A stretch of 64,000 nucleotides of DNA from IMGVR_UViG_3300028558_000016:418157-482156, one strand, 5' to 3'. Numbered from the stretch's first letter, positions 1 through 6,905 are shown. A program made the numbers and translations. Notes: a model not told the origin generated them from the sequence alone.

Positions 1-56
1 GACAGAGCGCCGGTCTTCGGAACCGGGCGTCGGGAGTTCGAATCTCTCCGTGGGTA
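1..56 (+). tRNA. tRNA-Arg(UCG), 5' end cut by window edge
   Basis: Anticodon arm ccggt-cttcgga-accgg; T arm gggag-ttcgaat-ctctc; 3' acceptor strand cgtgggt plus discriminator A; no encoded CCA. Confidence 0.9.
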
Positions 57-80
57 CTGAAGTAAAATGGAATTAAATAT

Positions 81-170
81 GCCCGTGTAGCCGAGGAAGT
101 TTTCTAAACTTTTATCCGTAATTGGAGCTGCGTCTCACGACTAATGGGGGTTCGAATCCCTCCACGGGTA
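81..170 (+). tRNA. Atypical tRNA-like element, apparent Arg(UCU) anticodon, no D-arm, 33-nt variable region
   Basis: Acceptor gcccgtg/cacgggt; T arm ggggg-ttcgaat-ccctc; arm gaagt-tttctaa-acttt has the same loop as the canonical Arg(UCU) gene at 4389; only 8 nt between acceptor and anticodon arm. Confidence 0.55.
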
Positions 171-185
171 CTTAAAATTAAAGTT

Positions 186-1349
186 ATGAAAATTGATATT
201 GATAAAATAAAACAGATCCCCAAAGAGATTTCGGAAGAATTTGGGATGTGCGTCTATGGACCAATCTCAGATGAGATTAAGGCATGGATGGAATTCCATG
301 GTATGCAATCGCAAAACATGGGAAATTATACAAACATCTATACAGATAAAAACATTATTGATCTGTTCAATAAACCAGAACCATTTGAATACATCGATGG
401 GTTCAGTCCAAACCTAAACAAGAATCTTCACATTGGACACTTCTCAAATTTAGTTCTTGCAAAGGCTTTCGTCTCTCTTGGAATAGCAAAGAAGACTGTG
501 GCAATATTGGGAGACACGTTAGAAGGGGATGTTTCAAAGGAAGATGCGTTGAACAACTACAATGAGATATGTGAGAAATTCTCATACCCCGTAGATAAGA
601 TGTTCATGGCTTCTGAAATGGAATCTGATTACAACCTCGTGGATGGTGTTCATGAATATGAAGGAACCAAAGTGTTCTATCTTGATACGCCATTAGTTGG
701 AATCAAAAGCGATGGGTCAACAACATATTTCTATCAGGACGTTGCATTGGCACAAAAATTAAATGCTCCAACATTATATCTTACAGGAAGCGAACAGAAC
801 GGACATTTCAACAGCTTAAAGGAAATGTTTCCTAAAATAAAGCACATTGGACTTGGACTTGTAAAAGCAAAAGGAGGAAAGATGTCAAGCAGACTCGGAA
901 ATGTTATTTGGATGCAAGATGTCATCGATGAAATGATGAGCAACTTTCAAGACGAAAAAGTGTGCTATAATGTTTTTGCAGGATTTATTTTGAAATCAAC
1001 TCCTAAGTCTGAAAAGAACATAGACATATATCAATTGGACAATCCATTGAATTCACCTGGATTGTACTTAAGCTATACGTTAGCAAAACTAAAAAGCGCT
1101 GGAGTGAAATGTGAAGGAAAAACATTCACCTCTCAAGATCTTCAATTCAAATACATGAAGGCCTTGAACTCTCTTTCTCCAAATATTTTGCTTGAAGGTT
1201 TAATTGATCATGCAAAGAAGATAAGCGGTTTATACATCACTCACAAGATAAAAGATAATGCGGTGAACCAGTCCATGTTTGAAATATTGGGTTCAGATTT
1301 ATTATTAGGAATGAGCCTCCTGGGTTTATTTGATGTTGACAAGGTTTAA
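186..1349 (+). CDS. argS: Arginyl-tRNA synthetase, shortened (about 387 aa)
   Basis: SPNLNKNLHIGH (HIGH motif), KSDGSTTY, KMSSRLGNVI and a DALR-like SPGLYLSYTLAKL segment; start moved to ATG 186 because the upstream ORF part overlaps the tRNA-like element. Confidence 0.9.
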   Translation: MKIDIDKIKQIPKEISEEFGMCVYGPISDEIKAWMEFHGMQSQNMGNYTNIYTDKNIIDLFNKPEPFEYIDGFSPNLNKNLHIGHFSNLVLAKAFVSLGIAKKTVAILGDTLEGDVSKEDALNNYNEICEKFSYPVDKMFMASEMESDYNLVDGVHEYEGTKVFYLDTPLVGIKSDGSTTYFYQDVALAQKLNAPTLYLTGSEQNGHFNSLKEMFPKIKHIGLGLVKAKGGKMSSRLGNVIWMQDVIDEMMSNFQDEKVCYNVFAGFILKSTPKSEKNIDIYQLDNPLNSPGLYLSYTLAKLKSAGVKCEGKTFTSQDLQFKYMKALNSLSPNILLEGLIDHAKKISGLYITHKIKDNAVNQSMFEILGSDLLLGMSLLGLFDVDKV

Positions 1350-1406
1350 TTAATTTTTCGTAAATTAGTCTTGCGCATCTATTTATAAACTGATAATCTA
1401 AATCAA

Positions 1407-2363
1407 ATGGCAACCAAAACATCTAAAGCCGCAACAGGAACCGTGAAAGCACGAACAGCAGGAAGAAAAGCAACGACATCAACAAAGACACCAATGAAAG
1501 CAGAAACTACATTGGAACCAAAAAAGGCCTCGAAGATTAAAATAAGTGGAAAAGAAGTTACATTGAACGGGTATTTTAAAATTGAATTGGGAACCTTTTC
1601 GATTTTAAAGCACAACATCCGAAACAACATAAGCACTCTTTTAATAGGTCCAACAGGACTTGGAAAAACAGATGTCGCAGTTAACATTGCGTCTGTGCTC
1701 GATGTTCCTATAACCATATTTGATATGGGAACGATGACTGACCCCATCATGGGACTTGTTGGAACTCACGTCATAGAGGTTAAAGATGGAAAAACATATT
1801 CTGAATTCAAGAAAAGCAGATTCTCTGACGTCATCCAAAAACCAGGAATAGTTTTATTGGATGAGGTCAATCGTGCTGCATCAGCCGCTAACAACTTATT
1901 ATTTCCTTGTTTAGATTTCAGAAGAGAGCTTCCAATGGAATATTCGTTTGGAGATACTAAGCCAATTCCAATTCATCCTAAATGTGTTTTCTTTGCAACG
2001 GCAAATATAGGATCTCAGTATACCGGAACTCACAAGCTTGACAGAGCATTAATCGATAGGTTCATGATTATTGCAGTTGATAGTCTCAACACTCAACAAA
2101 TTATGTCCACGTTAGAAGTGACTCATTCTAAATTAAGTGAGACTGACAGAAAAAAGATTGTTGACATTTACAACAAGATAAACAAAGAGCATGACGATTT
2201 CAAAATAGGTTTCAATTTGTCAATACGACATTTGAAAACTGTTGCGACACTTGTGCAAAACAAGTTCACGATATATGATGCGTATTATGCAATATGCAAA
2301 GGACTTGGTGGACCAGAAGGATTAAAAGCTATTGAATCGATCTTAAGCACCTCTAAAAAATGA
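1407..2363 (+). CDS. MoxR/CbbQ-NirQ-NorQ family AAA+ ATPase
   Basis: GPTGLGKT Walker A, LLDEVNR Walker B, ATAN sensor, LDRALIDRF. Confidence 0.9.
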   Translation: MATKTSKAATGTVKARTAGRKATTSTKTPMKAETTLEPKKASKIKISGKEVTLNGYFKIELGTFSILKHNIRNNISTLLIGPTGLGKTDVAVNIASVLDVPITIFDMGTMTDPIMGLVGTHVIEVKDGKTYSEFKKSRFSDVIQKPGIVLLDEVNRAASAANNLLFPCLDFRRELPMEYSFGDTKPIPIHPKCVFFATANIGSQYTGTHKLDRALIDRFMIIAVDSLNTQQIMSTLEVTHSKLSETDRKKIVDIYNKINKEHDDFKIGFNLSIRHLKTVATLVQNKFTIYDAYYAICKGLGGPEGLKAIESILSTSKK

Positions 2364-4099
2364 TAGGATTTGATATTACAGGAAAGAAATCAAAAAGCGT
2401 AACTAAATGGGAAGACTCATTGTTTGGAGGCTATTACAGAACTGTAATGGATTACCCGGACGTGAAAGTTCACAGCAACGTTGATTTTGATTTTGGAACC
2501 ATAGCGTATGGAAGTTACTTTTTAAAAGAGAAGATCTTGAAGATTTTCTTATCTAAGGTTAAAACACACGGTTACACTACAAAGCTTTTGGATAACTGTA
2601 CTGTCGAAAGAAAACGAGATGCATGGGGTGATGAAATCACTGAGGCCACCGTAGATAATAACAGCAAGCTCAGTACAATAAGAGCTGTGATTGCAAGAGA
2701 ACCAGAGTTTGCTCCTATGTTTTCCCATTATATGAAGTTTATAATGGACACCAGAATTTACTTTTACAAAAGCAATTCTAAAGCTCCAAGCAATGGGACT
2801 GGTTCTTCAGACGACGATTTTGAAGAATTTAAGGATGAAAACGAAAATGACGAATCATCCGGAAAATCAGAAGAAGAAAAATCTAAAAACGGAAACTCCG
2901 GTAAAGGCAAAGAGAAAGAGAAAGAAGAAGAGAAACCAGAAGAAACCAAGGATGAAAGCTCTGGTGATGGAGAAGGAGAAGAAAAAGAGGAGCCAGAAAA
3001 TTCCGAATCTGATGGTTCAAATTCTGAAGAAGAAAAGGAAGAAGAAAAAGGAGATGGAGAAGGAGAAGGAGAAGAAAAATCTCCAGAGGATAAGGCGTTG
3101 GAAGATAAATTAGAAAAAGAACTTGAGAAAAGGAAACAGGAAATAGAAGAACGAGAACAGAAGGCAAAACAAAAACCTGTCAAAAAATTAACTCAGGCTG
3201 AAATAAATCAAATCCAAGAATCTTTCAAAAAGGCCATTCAAAGTATAGTTGAAGAGTCCATTGTTCATAGCTACATTTCAGGATTTAAAAAACCTGTTAA
3301 AGTAATTTTTGAACGACCAAATGTTAGAGACACTGAGTTTAATTACGAAGACAAAAGAATAGCCGAGAATCTCGTTAAGATGCTCGACATTTCATTTGAC
3401 CCAGCGAAAGAAATAGTAAAGAACTTGCGTCTTGGCAAATTGGACATATCAAAGATTGCAGAGGTTCCAGCCGGAAATATTGCCATATACAAGCAGGATG
3501 TGGAAAATCAAACGACTAAACCATTTAGCATTGTAATATTATGTGATGAGTCAGGAAGCATGGGTTCTGGACATGAATACAAAGGACGTGGCGATAAATT
3601 GTATTCGCAATATAGAATAGTCAAACAATTGTACTTGGCATTTTCTGACATCATTCCACAGAATAAACTCTATGTGTATGGACATTCGGGATCAGAAGAA
3701 CCTGAGCTTTATGTTTATCAAGATTCTTATCGTCCAAATTTTACCAAGACGATTGATCACATGATCCACAACCATAATCACCATTCCAATTATGATGGAC
3801 CTGCAATAGAAGAAGTTTACAATCAGGTAAGAAATTCCACCGATGATAGAATAATTTTTATTTGTCTTTCTGATGGTCAACCTGCTGGAAATAATTATGG
3901 AGGTCACGATGATCAATTGAAAATGAAACAAATAATTGAAAAATGTAAGAGGGATGAATTCGTGACTGTTGGTGTTGGAATTCAATATTTCACCGTAAAG
4001 AATCTTTATCAATACAGCACGGTGGTAACTGATCTGGATGAAATGGCTAAGAAAGTGAGTCACATAGTCAATCACGTGGTCAAAAGTGAGTTTCAATAA
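2360..4099 (+). CDS. CobT-like vWA-domain protein with long acidic/charged linker; probable partner of the MoxR ATPase
   Basis: MIDAS-like ILCDESGSM and CLSDGQP; E/K/S/G-rich linker; ATGA overlap with the ATPase. Confidence 0.85.
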   Translation: MIGFDITGKKSKSVTKWEDSLFGGYYRTVMDYPDVKVHSNVDFDFGTIAYGSYFLKEKILKIFLSKVKTHGYTTKLLDNCTVERKRDAWGDEITEATVDNNSKLSTIRAVIAREPEFAPMFSHYMKFIMDTRIYFYKSNSKAPSNGTGSSDDDFEEFKDENENDESSGKSEEEKSKNGNSGKGKEKEKEEEKPEETKDESSGDGEGEEKEEPENSESDGSNSEEEKEEEKGDGEGEGEEKSPEDKALEDKLEKELEKRKQEIEEREQKAKQKPVKKLTQAEINQIQESFKKAIQSIVEESIVHSYISGFKKPVKVIFERPNVRDTEFNYEDKRIAENLVKMLDISFDPAKEIVKNLRLGKLDISKIAEVPAGNIAIYKQDVENQTTKPFSIVILCDESGSMGSGHEYKGRGDKLYSQYRIVKQLYLAFSDIIPQNKLYVYGHSGSEEPELYVYQDSYRPNFTKTIDHMIHNHNHHSNYDGPAIEEVYNQVRNSTDDRIIFICLSDGQPAGNNYGGHDDQLKMKQIIEKCKRDEFVTVGVGIQYFTVKNLYQYSTVVTDLDEMAKKVSHIVNHVVKSEFQ

Positions 4100-4116
4100 T
4101 TTTTTGTATATTAGCT

Positions 4117-4389
4117 ATGTTCTTTGACACGATACAAAATATTCTTCTCGCAAAGAGAAAGAGAAAAGAGTATGGATATACAGCAGTAGGAGAATTGCTT
4201 AGAAATGTTCATGGAACTGAAGCAAAAATAATAGATGTTATTTTTAATCCGGCTGGATCCATTATAAAATTTGCTTACGATGATGACATGTTCTATTATA
4301 CAACAATAGAGAAGCTCCAGACAAAATATTTTAAGATGATTGAATATTCTTCTGGTAGAATGTCAAATGAAGAATATGGAAATGAATAG
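4117..4389 (+). CDS. Hypothetical protein
   Basis: 90-aa ORF in the co-oriented block. Confidence 0.6.
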   Translation: MFFDTIQNILLAKRKRKEYGYTAVGELLRNVHGTEAKIIDVIFNPAGSIIKFAYDDDMFYYTTIEKLQTKYFKMIEYSSGRMSNEEYGNE

Positions 4390-4462
4390 GTCCCGTAGCT
4401 CAGCTGGATAGAGCACAGGTTTTCTAAACCTGCGGTCCTTGGTTCGAATCCAAGCGGGATCA
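4389..4462 (+). tRNA. tRNA-Arg(UCU)
   Basis: Full cloverleaf: ggtcccg/cgggatc; D arm gctc-agctggata-gagc with A20; caggt-tttctaa-acctg; T loop ttcgaat. Confidence 0.95.
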
Positions 4463-4466
4463 CAAA

Positions 4467-5419: not shown

Positions 5420-6112
5420 ATGTCAGCATTTAATTTAGCAGTTCCACCACATCCACTATCCTCGTTATTACTAAGAGCAATTAACTGGGCACAGCCTGAT
5501 GATCCTGAAAAGAAATATCCTATTCTTGGAAGAATGAGATATGTTTGGATCGATGAAGAGAAAAATATTAAGATTCTGGTTAGAGATGCTCCTGACTCAT
5601 GGTCAGAGGAAAAGGACGAAGTGATGAAACAAATCAAAGGTCATGAAACTTTTGTGAGTGTTGAAGTTTCTGAAAAAGATTCTACACATCTAATTGCCAC
5701 ATTCAAGCCTGTAATGGAAACTTCTTATGACAGAAGCATTCCAATGGATGAATTCCTCGATAACATCCACATATTTGATGAGGGTGCTCAATCTAAAGGT
5801 TGGCCGTCTCTTCTTGTTGGACCATGGGAATTATTTGATATTGCTATGGAGAAAATGAAAAATGGAGAGATGAGTCCCAAGATGGAGAGATTTGGTGAGC
5901 AATTAAAAGAAATGCTAAATGAGTCGGAAGCGGAAGACAAGCTTGAAGAGATGACAAAGGAAGCTGGTATTGATGGATTTGAAACTAAGAAAATAAAAGT
6001 GATGACAGTCGACAGAGTAGGAAATTTGAGTGATGAGACTGAAAGATTCATGAAAGAAAATGACAATGGAAAAACTCCTGGACAAGATACAAGCCAAGAT
6101 ACTCGTTCTTAA
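5420..6112 (+). CDS. Hypothetical acidic protein
   Basis: 230-aa ORF. Confidence 0.7.
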   Translation: MSAFNLAVPPHPLSSLLLRAINWAQPDDPEKKYPILGRMRYVWIDEEKNIKILVRDAPDSWSEEKDEVMKQIKGHETFVSVEVSEKDSTHLIATFKPVMETSYDRSIPMDEFLDNIHIFDEGAQSKGWPSLLVGPWELFDIAMEKMKNGEMSPKMERFGEQLKEMLNESEAEDKLEEMTKEAGIDGFETKKIKVMTVDRVGNLSDETERFMKENDNGKTPGQDTSQDTRS

Positions 6113-6547: not shown

Positions 6548-6840
6548 TGGAAAAATTTGCAAATAAAATAACCGAATTGCTCGTTTTAAAGAGAAAAAAT
6601 AACAAAATCTTTAAAAACGTTTCAGGAATGGAATTTATTTGGGAAATGGCAGCAAATTTTGGAATCCATAATATACAAACTGTTTCTATAATAGCAGAAA
6701 AAGATTTTATGACGCCGATGGTAGTTATAAATGGATTGGTTGTCGGAAACATATCGCGTGAAATGCTTCAGGATATTAAATCTAAAGGTTCACCGCCGGC
6801 ATGTTGGAATGAGGAAATAATGGAAATAATGGTCCCTTAG
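6547..6840 (+). CDS. Hypothetical protein
   Basis: 97-aa coupled ORF; last codons overlap the tRNA. Confidence 0.6.
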   Translation: MEKFANKITELLVLKRKNNKIFKNVSGMEFIWEMAANFGIHNIQTVSIIAEKDFMTPMVVINGLVVGNISREMLQDIKSKGSPPACWNEEIMEIMVP

Positions 6841-6904
6841 CTCAGTTGGTTAGAGCGCCTGACTCATAATCAGAGGGTCGCAGGTTCAAATCCTGCAGGG
6901 ACCA
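6831..6904 (+). tRNA. tRNA with CAU anticodon, probably Ile2 (lysidine-type)
   Basis: ggtccct/agggacc acceptor, loop ctcataa; overall sequence resembles recalled bacterial tRNA-Ile2 (GGCCCCTTAGCTCAGTGGTTAGAGC...GACTCATAATC) more than initiator Met. Confidence 0.9.
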
Positions 6905-6905
6905 C

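What the first reader, a model, noticed from the sequence alone, without database searches (positions are those of the whole stretch)
1..4462. Shortened ArgRS embedded among three Arg tRNA genes: possible self-contained arginylation module
Seen: tRNA-Arg(UCG), an atypical Arg(UCU)-like RNA ending 15 nt before the ArgRS start, a 387-aa ArgRS, and a canonical tRNA-Arg(UCU) 3 kb downstream. Only about 70 aa precede the SPN..HIGH strand. Known: bacterial ArgRS is roughly 550-590 aa, and its N-terminal domain reads A20 in the tRNA D-loop. Inference: the reduced N-domain and the neighbouring D-arm-less RNA may be a co-evolved orthogonal pair, either sustaining AGA decoding independently of the host or donating Arg to a non-ribosomal reaction.
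Basis: partly seen in the sequence, partly recalled or inferred. Interest (0 to 1): 0.8.

Follow-up and report, generated by a model that had tools for sequence, protein, structure and literature searches.

The report
Compact phage ArgRS beside rewired tRNA-Arg
A huge phage carries a stripped-down arginyl-tRNA synthetase inside a cluster of arginine tRNA genes, and one of these tRNAs belongs to a widespread, apparently undescribed phage tRNA family whose D-arm is rewired, although this odd tRNA also occurs in many phages that lack the enzyme, so the two are not an exclusive pair.

Summary
Window 1-56 is the 3' part of tRNA-Arg(UCG). Window 81-170 is an atypical tRNA-like RNA with a UCU anticodon that ends 15 nt before a 387-aa ArgRS gene (186-1349). 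A canonical tRNA-Arg(UCU) lies at 4389-4463. The enzyme belongs to a conserved compact ArgRS family of about 390 aa found on huge-phage contigs. It keeps HIGH, KMSSR, the arginine-binding residues, a C-terminal helical domain aligned with that of ArgRS, and a miniature N-domain. Its model matches solved ArgRS structures at Z about 30. Genes of this family sit next to tRNA-Arg genes far more often than chance predicts. The atypical RNA is not a one-off. More than 80 distinct phage sequences share its fold, and 77 of 83 carry Arg anticodons. Covariation shows that the four D-stem pairs enclose the anticodon arm, and that a D-loop-like UAAYUGGA bulge interrupts the 3' strand. This family also occurs in cultured 45-93 kb phages with no detected homologue of this ArgRS. 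In Pseudomonas phage PA11 it is the only tRNA gene detected. Most ArgRS homologues have no such RNA within 6 kb. The same fold also carries Ile anticodons. The "co-evolved orthogonal pair" idea is therefore not supported. The best reading is an arginine-decoding supplement in a genome where AGA makes up 70% of Arg codons. The rewired tRNA fold is the real novelty.

The parts
1..56 (+). 3' two-thirds of a canonical tRNA-Arg(UCG), cut by the window edge
   Evidence: Rfam tRNA 33.7 bits, 5'-truncated. The complete gene is at L010 5799-5872. tRNA-Arg(ACG) and tRNA-Arg(CCU) lie just upstream, outside the window.
81..170 (+). Rewired (non-cloverleaf) tRNA-Arg(UCU), 90 nt. Acceptor stem: 81-87 with 163-169. 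U8A9: 88-89. D-stem 5' strand: 90-93, paired with 117-118 and 127-128. Anticodon arm: 96-112, with anticodon 103-105. D-loop-like bulge UAAUUGGA: 119-126. Small variable hairpin: 132-134 with 139-141. T-arm: 146-162. Discriminator A: 170.
   Evidence: Rfam tRNA 34.7 bits. Own covariance models score it 109.8 bits (R1) and 82.6 bits (R2). The helices are supported by covariation over 83 distinct homologues. The alternative local hairpin is not supported.
186..1349 (+). Compact arginyl-tRNA synthetase, 387 aa (stop codon included in the range). Mini N-domain about residues 1-62, Rossmann core with HIGH at 82-85 and KMSSR at 232-236, C-terminal helical anticodon-binding-type domain about residues 290-387.
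   Evidence: Pfam PF00750. AF2 model pLDDT 93. Top 20 Foldseek and top VIA matches are ArgRS, Z up to 30.3. Motif mapping to yeast ArgRS. At least 728 homologues of about 390 aa.
4389..4463 (+). Canonical tRNA-Arg(UCU)
   Evidence: ARAGORN. Rfam 68 bits.

Best explanation
The region is the end of an arginine-rich tRNA array in a roughly 482-kb phage, followed by the phage's own compact ArgRS.

The enzyme is a minimised but probably active class Ia arginyl-tRNA synthetase. It has lost about 75 N-terminal residues and about 85 residues between HIGH and the KSDG strand of the catalytic domain. It keeps the active site, a small N-domain and the C-terminal helical domain. I infer that it charges the phage's (and probably the host's) tRNA-Arg, so that an AT-rich genome dominated by AGA codons can be translated when host capacity is limiting or shut down.

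The RNA at 81-170 is one of the substrates, not a private partner. It belongs to a widespread phage tRNA family in which the anticodon arm is nested inside the D-stem (pairs 10-25, 11-24, 12-23 and 13-22 all kept). The D-loop is moved to an 8-nt bulge, UAAYUGGA, between positions 23 and 24. The acceptor/T minihelix, U8, the GG-A motif, C35 and U/G36 are all retained. This makes it plausible that ordinary bacterial ArgRS, RNase P, the CCA-adding enzyme and EF-Tu still accept it.

Shown: the gene content, the protein fold and motifs, the RNA pairing scheme, the distribution of both elements and the codon usage.

Inferred: aminoacylation, ribosomal use, and the reason the fold was selected.
For: Enzyme:
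- Pfam ArgRS catalytic domain in 105 of 121 family members and DALR in 11 of 121.
- Model pLDDT 93, pTM 0.91.
- ArgRS structures are the best matches: 1f7u_A Z 30.3 over model residues 6-387, and E. coli 5yym_B Z 28.1 over 5-387. CysRS and MetRS reach at most 23.8 and align only from about residue 60.
- The profile alignment to yeast ArgRS equates D71/E148, N76/N153, Y181/Y347, D185/D351, Q204/Q375, KMSSR/MSTR, GLYLSY/GPYLQY and the C-terminal LGLF.IDKV/LGLTPVERM.
- These residues are invariant or nearly so in 121 sequences.
- tRNA-Arg genes are enriched next to the gene: odds ratio 13, Fisher p = 6e-9, not corrected for phylogeny.

RNA:
- 93.9% of cells pair, against 62.3% in shuffles.
- Pair counts: 10-25 is GC 40 / AU 27. 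13-22 is GC 63 / AU 8 / CG 4 / UA 2. 11-24 is CG 66. 12-23 is CG 78.
- These D-stem pairs were not part of the model used to build the alignment.
- Anticodons: UCU 50, ACG 11, UCG 9, CCU 6, GCG 1 of 83.
- At least 71 of 83 bulges end in GGA.
- Copies sit 5-7 nt from canonical tRNAs inside arrays.

Context:
- AGA is 70.5% of Arg codons and GC is 36%.
- PA11 (GC 45%) has this RNA as its only tRNA gene detected by ARAGORN or model R2, and no aaRS gene. By general knowledge, not checked here, its host is GC-rich and rarely uses AGA or AGG.
Against: - No expression, processing or charging data exist for either element.
- The enzyme scores far below the curated argS cut-off (48 vs 262 bits). Its N-domain is not recognised by Pfam PF03485, so recognition of A20 is unproven.
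- The bulge has only one nucleotide after GG. It could correspond to A21 rather than A20.
- The phage also has a canonical tRNA-Arg(UCU), so a plain codon-supply role does not explain why a second, rewired copy is kept.
- The three-dimensional shape of the rewired RNA was not modelled.
Confidence: 0.6

Rival explanations
1. Co-evolved orthogonal pair. The shortened ArgRS has lost the ability to read a normal D-loop and is specialised for the D-hairpin-less RNA, which host ArgRS cannot charge.
For: The RNA ends exactly 15 nt before the ArgRS start in two lineages whose enzymes are only about 49% identical (window and L022). In L027 two rewired Arg tRNAs lie about 300-400 nt downstream of the gene. 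The N-domain is reduced and is not recognised by Pfam.
Against: The RNA family occurs in 11 cultured phage genomes in which no homologue of this ArgRS was detected. Of the 101 fetched loci holding the RNA pattern, only 4 also hold the ArgRS, and two of these duplicate contigs already counted (the window's own contig and the L026 contig). Only 4 of 44 distinct ArgRS loci hold the RNA within 6 kb. Many ArgRS genes are instead flanked by canonical tRNA-Arg. LR756504 has the enzyme but no blastn-detectable copy of the RNA. The fold is shared with Ile anticodons. The mini N-domain still aligns structurally with the ArgRS N-domain.
Confidence: 0.07
2. The rewired tRNA-Arg is a dedicated arginine donor for a non-ribosomal reaction (aminoacyl-tRNA transferase chemistry), by analogy with the staphylococcal cell-wall tRNA-Gly.
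For: It duplicates a canonical isoacceptor in the same genome, as dedicated non-proteinogenic tRNAs do.
Against: Pfam recognises no transferase-type domain near it in the window or among nine of the recurrent neighbour families elsewhere. The T-arm, the GG motif and a 7-nt anticodon loop with U33 are kept, and the commonest loops have A at position 37. Five different Arg anticodons occur, which makes sense for decoding different codons but is unnecessary for a donor. It is the only detected tRNA of PA11, a phage that uses AGA and AGG for 43% of its Arg codons.
Confidence: 0.05
3. The RNA at 81-170 is a tRNA-mimic leader that lets ArgRS control its own mRNA, in the manner of the thrS operator or a T-box.
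For: It lies immediately upstream of the start codon (15 nt) in two lineages.
Against: Most family members lie in tRNA arrays or in phages without ArgRS. The full acceptor stem, T-arm and discriminator are maintained by covariation, which an operator would not need. The 15-nt spacers are unrelated in sequence.
Confidence: 0.05
4. The rewired RNA is a decaying tRNA pseudogene or a chance tRNA-like sequence, and the short ORF is a degenerate, inactive ArgRS remnant.
For: ARAGORN does not call the RNA. The enzyme misses the curated argS threshold.
Against: 83 distinct RNA sequences keep every helix through compensatory changes. At least 728 enzyme homologues keep the same length, with 40 invariant columns that include the catalytic motifs. 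The structure model is very confident.
Confidence: 0.02

Closest known systems
Class Ia arginyl-tRNA synthetase (argS; Pfam PF00750 catalytic, PF05746 DALR, PF03485 N-terminal; structures 1f7u, 5b63, 5yym, 1iq0)
   Same: Rossmann core with HIGH and an MSxR-type second motif. All five arginine-binding positions are equated by profile alignment. The C-terminal helical domain has the G.Y.sY signature and the conserved C-terminus. Overall fold matches at Z 28-30.
   Different: 387 aa instead of 530-610. It lacks about 75 N-terminal residues, about 85 residues between HIGH and the KSDG strand, and about 40 more in the C-terminal half. From memory, the missing 85 residues correspond to the insertion domains of yeast ArgRS. 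Sequence identity to solved ArgRS is 16-20%. It falls below the NCBIfam equivalog cut-off. Full-length ArgRS appear only at E about 1e-9 to 1e-11 in an exhaustive search.
aaRS and tRNA arrays of huge (over 200 kb) phages and giant viruses
   Same: The enzyme occurs on contigs of up to 727 kb and sits next to tRNA arrays. A compact class II aaRS neighbours the homologue in LR745206.
   Different: I found no description of this compact ArgRS family or of its linkage to tRNA-Arg genes. Some JGI records simply label it arginyl-tRNA synthetase.
D-armless mitochondrial tRNAs (e.g. mt-tRNA-Ser(AGY), nematode mt-tRNAs; review PMC7609411)
   Same: There is no D hairpin. The acceptor/T arm and the anticodon arm are joined by a three-way junction.
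   Different: Here the four D-stem base pairs and a GG-containing D-loop-like segment are kept but rewired around the anticodon arm. The T-arm is fully canonical. The setting is bacterial translation, where all known tRNAs are stated to be cloverleaf (abstract of PMC11551756).
Other non-canonical bacterial or phage tRNAs (tRNA-Sec, allo-tRNAs with 8/4 or 9/3 acceptor/T stems; PMC5389517)
   Same: They are natural departures from the standard cloverleaf, found by metagenome mining and missed or mis-scored by standard tRNA finders.
   Different: Those classes alter helix lengths and the variable arm. This class keeps the 7/5 acceptor/T arrangement and changes the connectivity of the D and anticodon arms.
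Phage tRNA genes that supplement rare codons or replace host tRNAs destroyed by defence nucleases (T4 and T5 tRNA regions with homing endonucleases)
   Same: Position in tRNA arrays. Homing endonucleases are recurrent neighbours. The match to phage codon usage is shown by AGA in the window and by AGA/AGG in PA11.
   Different: Known examples are canonical cloverleaf tRNAs with, at most, changes in the anticodon loop.

Membership tests
Arginyl-tRNA synthetase (class Ia) | Rossmann-fold catalytic domain with the HIGH signature | tested here: met
   LHIGH at residues 81-85. H82, G84 and H85 are invariant in 121 homologues. Pfam PF00750 hit.
Arginyl-tRNA synthetase (class Ia) | Second class I motif (KMSKS, MSTR-type in ArgRS) | tested here: met
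   KMSSR at 232-236 aligns with yeast MSTRK. K232, M233 and S235 are at least 90% conserved.
Arginyl-tRNA synthetase (class Ia) | Arginine-binding residues (yeast E148, N153, Y347, D351, Q375; residue roles recalled from the yeast structure papers) | tested here: met
   The profile alignment equates D71, N76, Y181, D185 and Q204 with these residues. All five are invariant in the family.
Arginyl-tRNA synthetase (class Ia) | C-terminal helical anticodon-binding (DALR) domain | tested here: met
   Structural alignment runs to residue 387 of the model and to the C-terminus of ArgRS chains. DALR_1 is detected by sequence in 11 of 121 members, but not in the window protein itself.
Arginyl-tRNA synthetase (class Ia) | N-terminal D-loop-reading domain (Arg_tRNA_synt_N) | tested here: inconclusive
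   PF03485 is not detected in any member. Residues 5-62 are nevertheless included in the structural alignments to the N-terminal parts of yeast and E. coli ArgRS. Residue-level contacts with A20 could not be checked.
Arginyl-tRNA synthetase (class Ia) | Curated equivalog score (NCBIfam TIGR00456) | tested here: not met
   48.2 bits against a cut-off of 261.65. It is a divergent, compact clade.
Arginyl-tRNA synthetase (class Ia) | tRNA-dependent arginylation activity | not testable with these tools
   Needs an enzyme assay.
tRNA (Rfam RF00005) | Score at or above the family gathering threshold | tested here: met
   34.7 bits against 29.
tRNA (elongator) | 7-bp acceptor stem, 5-bp T-stem with a GTTCGAAT-type loop, and a 7-nt anticodon loop with U33 and a purine at position 37 | tested here: met
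   Acceptor stem 98.6% paired and T-stem 97.6% paired, both with many compensatory changes. The commonest loops are CUUCUAA, CUUCUAC and CUACGAA.
tRNA (elongator) | D hairpin (stem 10-13/22-25 closed by the D-loop) placed before the anticodon arm | tested here: not met
   The D-stem pairs exist but enclose the anticodon arm. The D-loop-like segment is a bulge between positions 23 and 24. ARAGORN fails to call the gene.
Bacterial tRNA-Arg identity set (A20, C35, U/G36, A/G73; PMC9976931) | C35 and U/G36 in the anticodon | tested here: met
   77 of 83 distinct sequences have NCU or NCG anticodons.
Bacterial tRNA-Arg identity set (A20, C35, U/G36, A/G73; PMC9976931) | A20 following G18G19 in the D-loop | tested here: inconclusive
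   At least 71 of 83 bulges end in GGA. With only one nucleotide after GG, it cannot be told from sequence whether this A is equivalent to A20 or to A21.
Orthogonal aaRS/tRNA pair | Strict co-occurrence of the enzyme and the RNA | tested here: not met
   The RNA occurs without the enzyme in 11 cultured phage genomes and in most viral loci. The enzyme occurs without the RNA within 6 kb in 40 of 44 loci.

The most novel reading that the evidence does not exclude
The rewired D-arm tRNAs (Arg and Ile) are fully functional elongator tRNAs. That would make them the first natural non-cloverleaf architecture used in bacterial translation. They would be kept alongside canonical isoacceptors and spread with homing endonucleases because the altered core escapes host tRNA-targeting immunity or host-specific processing. 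They would still be chargeable through the retained GG-A bulge and C35. The compact phage ArgRS would be one of the enzymes adapted to accept them.
Probability: 0.3. Interest if true: 0.9.

Novelty: new variant of a known kind. Interest (0 to 1): 0.7.

Why it matters
Two things would interest specialists.

First, the compact enzyme. A 387-aa ArgRS that keeps every catalytic signature defines a natural minimal scaffold for a class Ia synthetase. It also shows that huge phages place the enzyme physically next to its tRNAs.

Second, and more important, the tRNA fold. Current reviews and engineering papers treat the cloverleaf as universal for bacterial tRNAs (abstract of PMC11551756). Here a covariation-supported alternative wiring of the D and anticodon arms is found in more than 80 distinct phage sequences, including cultured Pseudomonas and Maribacter phages. 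There it is unannotated or overlapped by hypothetical or homing-endonuclease CDS annotations.

If these RNAs are charged and used by the ribosome, they would do three things:
- They would relax assumed structural requirements for RNase P, ArgRS/IleRS, EF-Tu and the ribosome.
- They would give ready-made candidates for orthogonal tRNA engineering.
- They would expose a blind spot in tRNA annotation of phage genomes.

The question is directly testable in culturable systems such as PA11, Panino and Boevelstad.

Tried and rejected
- Megablast of the region against 50,697 phage records found nothing. Only tblastn found relatives.
- I first considered that the UCU hairpin was an insertion in a D-loop, with the true anticodon arm downstream. 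I rejected this because the 80-nt family members have no room for another arm, and because the hairpin loop is restricted to Arg anticodons.
- I considered a local hairpin, UCCG-UAAU-UGGA, which is the RNAfold minimum-energy solution. I rejected it because it is 66.7% paired with almost no compensatory change, against 82-96% paired with 72 double-sided changes for the nested D-stem.
- I considered simple removal of an intron to restore a cloverleaf. I rejected it because the D-loop-like segment and the anticodon arm are swapped in order, which no single excision can fix.
- I checked whether the second 392-aa ORF next to the homologue in LR745206 is an ArgRS paralogue. It is not. It is a class II Asp/Asn/Lys-type enzyme.
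- I checked whether the AAA+/vWA genes between the ArgRS and tRNA-Arg(UCU) belong to a conserved module. They do not, because they are absent from every related locus.
- I looked for RNA-repair or transferase genes as recurrent neighbours of the rewired tRNA. I found homing endonucleases and replication genes instead.
- Seven literature searches found no description of the fold or of the compact ArgRS.
- RNAalifold on the model-fitted alignment only returned the three helices already in the model. The extra pairs came from my own mutual-information scan.


Full report
**Observation**

ARAGORN finds only two tRNAs in the window: tRNA-Arg(UCU) at 4389-4463 and tRNA-Met at 6831-6905. Rfam's tRNA model adds two more matches above its gathering score. 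One is a 5'-truncated match at 1-56. The other is a 90-nt match at 81-170 in which five nucleotides stand in for the D-arm and about 30 extra nucleotides precede the T-arm.

- The loop of the first match reads CUUCGGA, giving anticodon UCG. The loop of the second reads UUUCUAA, giving UCU.
- The ORF that follows runs 144-1349 from the first ATG. Every homologue begins MKI(D/N)..., which corresponds to ATG 186, so the protein is 387 aa and starts 15 nt after the atypical RNA.
- The window comes from IMG/VR contig 3300028558_000016 (482,156 bp; locus L010).
- On that contig the truncated gene is a complete tRNA-Arg(UCG). It is preceded by tRNA-Arg(ACG) and tRNA-Arg(CCU).

The cluster therefore holds five Arg tRNA genes around one ArgRS gene.

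**The enzyme**

Sequence searches identify the protein only weakly as ArgRS. Pfam PF00750 matches at E = 3.6e-8 over residues 155-252. NCBIfam argS gives 48 bits against a cut-off of 262. Solved ArgRS chains match at E about 0.03.

It is nevertheless a member of a large and uniform family.

- At least 728 clusters at 90% identity belong to it. The best 120 are 366-412 aa long and lie on contigs of up to 727 kb.
- An exhaustive HMMER scan of 1.84 billion representatives returns 434 relatives. Most full-length hits are 360-420 aa. Canonical ArgRS of 520-590 aa appear only at E of about 1e-9 to 1e-11.
- In 121 aligned members, 40 columns are invariant. They include D71, S74-P75-N76, H82, G84, H85, Y181, D185, E203, Q204, H207 and F208.
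- A profile of the family aligns with yeast ArgRS so that D71, N76, Y181, D185 and Q204 fall on E148, N153, Y347, D351 and Q375. From memory of the yeast structure papers, these are the arginine-binding residues.
- In the same alignment KMSSR falls on MSTRK, GLYLSY on GPYLQY, and the C-terminus LGLF.IDKV on LGLTPVERM.
- The AlphaFold model is very confident, with pLDDT 93 and pTM 0.91.
- The 20 best Foldseek matches are all ArgRS. In the re-alignment the best are yeast ArgRS with tRNA (1f7u_A, Z 30.3, model 6-387 against chain 56-607) and E. coli ArgRS (5yym_B, Z 28.1, model 5-387 against chain 4-577). CysRS and MetRS reach at most Z 23.8 and align only from about residue 60.

The protein thus keeps a miniature N-domain, the catalytic core and the C-terminal helical domain that binds the anticodon in ArgRS.

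- About 75 N-terminal residues are missing.
- About 85 residues between HIGH and the KSDG strand are also missing. From memory, these are the insertion domains of the Rossmann fold.
- About 40 residues are missing from the C-terminal half.
- Pfam's N-terminal ArgRS domain is not detected in any member, and DALR is detected in 11 of 121.

Whether the mini N-domain still reads the D-loop could not be decided.

**Linkage to Arg tRNAs**

I examined 44 distinct loci that encode a homologue, with 6 kb on either side. Within 1 kb of the gene, 22 of 44 tRNAs are tRNA-Arg. Farther away, 8 of 115 are (odds ratio 13, p = 6e-9). This count is not corrected for shared ancestry.

The AAA+/MoxR-like and vWA/CobT-like genes at 1407-4099 are not conserved neighbours. 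Pfam recognises nothing in the small ORFs up to position 6112. The conserved unit is therefore ArgRS plus tRNA-Arg genes and nothing else.

**The atypical RNA**

A covariance model built from the window copy and a copy in the 635-kb phage LR745206 found further copies.

- One lies in L022, again ending 15 nt before the ArgRS start.
- Two lie in L026/L027, with anticodons UCG and UCU, just downstream of the ArgRS and two canonical Arg tRNAs.

I then scanned IMG/VR with a pattern taken from the conserved 3' half of the RNA, which does not include the anticodon. It matched 101 stretches. Nearly all scored 55-91 bits with the model.

- Of 83 distinct sequences, 77 carry Arg anticodons: UCU 50, ACG 11, UCG 9, CCU 6 and GCG 1.
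- A mutual-information scan revealed pairs that were not in the model. Position 10 pairs with the Y of G-Y-U-G (GC 40, AU 27). Position 13 pairs with the base before GUAA (GC 63, AU 8, CG 4, UA 2). Positions 11 and 12 pair with invariant Gs.
- These are the four canonical D-stem pairs: 10-25, 11-24, 12-23 and 13-22. The difference is that the anticodon arm lies between 13 and 22, where the D-loop should be. An 8-nt segment, UAAYUGGA, which resembles a D-loop (A-R-Y-Y-G-G-A), is a bulge between 23 and 24.
- The whole structure is 93.9% paired, against 62.3% in shuffles and 41-47% when partners are slid.
- The minimum-energy alternative, a local hairpin in this segment, is only 66.7% paired and shows almost no compensatory change.
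- A 90-nt subclass that includes the window copy adds a 3-bp variable hairpin that also covaries: GUC/GAC, GCA/UGC and GAU/AUC.

The RNA is therefore neither a decayed tRNA nor simply D-armless. It is a conserved, rewired tRNA. It keeps U8, the D-stem, a GG-A motif, a normal anticodon loop, a canonical T-arm and a 7-bp acceptor stem.

**Distribution and the pairing hypothesis**

The same RNA occurs in cultured phages:

- Pseudomonas phage PA11 and its relatives IME180, TC6, PSA11, Ty, FBPa8, PP21 and HHBS10_2 (45-50 kb).
- Pseudomonas phage Boevelstad (93 kb).
- Maribacter phage Panino (77 kb).

In all three fetched records (PA11, Panino and Boevelstad) it scores 73-88 bits and has a UCU anticodon. 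It is unannotated, or overlapped by a hypothetical or HNH-endonuclease CDS.

None of these genomes has a detected homologue of this ArgRS. Only LR745206 and LR756504 do among 50,697 phage records, plus one weak partial hit in an Enterococcus phage.

- PA11's complete genome has no aaRS gene, no ARAGORN-detectable tRNA and exactly one hit of the refined model.
- PA11 has 45% GC and uses AGA and AGG for 43% of its Arg codons. By general knowledge, not checked here, its host is GC-rich and rarely uses these codons. If the RNA is functional, a host ArgRS must charge it.
- Conversely, only 4 of 44 distinct ArgRS loci hold the RNA within 6 kb. LR756504 has no blastn-detectable copy.
- Only 4 of the 101 pattern loci hold the ArgRS, and two of these duplicate contigs already counted.
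- A sister group with the same wiring carries Ile anticodons, UAU and GAU. Two copies lie on the window's own contig, at L010 3595-3676 and 5055-5135.
- In 596 Gb of bacterial and archaeal genomes the pattern occurs only 15 times. The model confirms 10 of these, all on MAG contigs. The family is essentially viral.
- Recurrent neighbours in small phage contigs are homing endonucleases and replication genes, not RNA-repair enzymes or synthetases.

Together these results remove the basis for an exclusive, co-evolved enzyme-RNA pair. The repeated close linkage follows most simply from both being parts of arginine tRNA clusters.

**Most likely function**

The window has 36% GC, and AGA makes up 70.5% of Arg codons in its long ORFs. 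The contig supplies anticodons ACG, CCU, UCG and UCU, with UCU present twice (once canonical, once rewired), together with its own ArgRS.

The best-supported reading is a translation supplement. The compact ArgRS charges tRNA-Arg in general, and the rewired tRNA is an additional AGA decoder.

Bacterial arginine identity rests on A20, C35, U/G36 and A/G73 (PMC9976931). The family keeps C35 and U/G36, has A or G at the discriminator position in 57 of 83 sequences, and has an A directly after GG in at least 71 of 83 bulges.

Why a rewired copy is kept beside a canonical one is not explained. Escape from host tRNA-targeting defences, or from host-specific processing, is an attractive but untested idea. 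Only the homing-endonuclease neighbourhood speaks for it, and only by analogy with the T4 and T6 tRNA regions.

**Comparison and novelty**

- The enzyme is a divergent, minimal member of the ArgRS family. It is a new variant, not a new kind. Some JGI records already label it arginyl-tRNA synthetase.
- The RNA is a tRNA by Rfam's threshold and by every feature except the D hairpin.
- Known non-canonical tRNAs (tRNA-Sec, allo-tRNAs, D-armless mitochondrial tRNAs) differ from it in the ways listed under Closest known systems.
- Seven full-text searches found no description of this wiring.

I therefore rate the finding as a new variant of a known kind. Its interest is substantial, and it comes from the tRNA fold, not from the proposed orthogonal pair.

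Noticed in passing
L010 3595-3676 and 5055-5135 (same contig, upstream of the window); also L027 2365-2441, 2447-2537 and 2673-2752; L008 1346-1424; L001 2210-2288: The same rewired D-arm architecture occurs with Ile anticodons (UAU and GAU). Model R2 scores these copies 37-65 bits (six at 48-65, L001 2210-2288 at 36.9), against at most 33 bits for canonical tRNAs. Only Arg and Ile versions were seen.
   Followed up: partly
L010 5487-5632 (just upstream of the window): A tRNA-Ile(GAU)-like gene (Rfam 48.7 bits over 146 nt) carries an insert of about 72 nt after the anticodon loop. The insert contains a second perfect anticodon-type hairpin, CACGG-CUCAUAA-CCGUG (CAU). It could be an intron-like insertion or a composite tRNA. 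ARAGORN does not call it.
   Followed up: no
L010 1574-1657 and 2034-2123; also L001 2631-2717, L002 4323-4503, L008, L026, L039 and L042: Long tRNAs of 84-93 nt with type-II-like bodies and long variable arms carry anticodons that normally belong to short tRNAs (His, Trp, Asn, Thr, Met, Cys, Val, Ile). They often sit directly beside a canonical tRNA with the same anticodon.
   Followed up: no
L001 4755-5933: A compact 392-aa class II Asp/Asn/Lys-type aminoacyl-tRNA synthetase (PF00152, E = 1e-61) lies immediately upstream of the ArgRS homologue in the 635-kb phage LR745206. Miniaturised synthetases may be a general trait of these phages.
   Followed up: partly
window 1407-4099: An AAA_5/MoxR-CobS-GvpN-like ATPase (1407-2363) overlaps by 4 nt a 579-aa vWA/CobT-like protein (2360-4099). 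The vWA protein has a long acidic and lysine-rich low-complexity insert at about residues 135-280. The pair is not conserved next to ArgRS homologues.
   Followed up: partly
L022 794-865; whole window: A related huge phage encodes a tRNA with anticodon CUA, an amber suppressor that ARAGORN labels Pyl. In the window, TAG ends only 1 of 45 long ORFs (TAA 34, TGA 10). No in-frame TAG problem was seen in the ORFs examined.
   Followed up: no
L150 2072-2577 (PA11), L151 2431-2577 (Panino), L152 1062-2580 (Boevelstad): In cultured phage records the rewired tRNA-Arg is unannotated. It is overlapped by an HNH-endonuclease CDS in PA11 and by a 'hypothetical protein' CDS in Panino. In Boevelstad it lies about 300 nt downstream of an RNA ligase gene. 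These annotations probably need correcting.
   Followed up: partly
window 6831-6905: A canonical tRNA-Met(CAT) lies 2.4 kb downstream of the Arg cluster. A tRNA-Met is also the nearest tRNA, about 500 nt upstream, to the ArgRS homologue in L004, L007 and L009.
   Followed up: no
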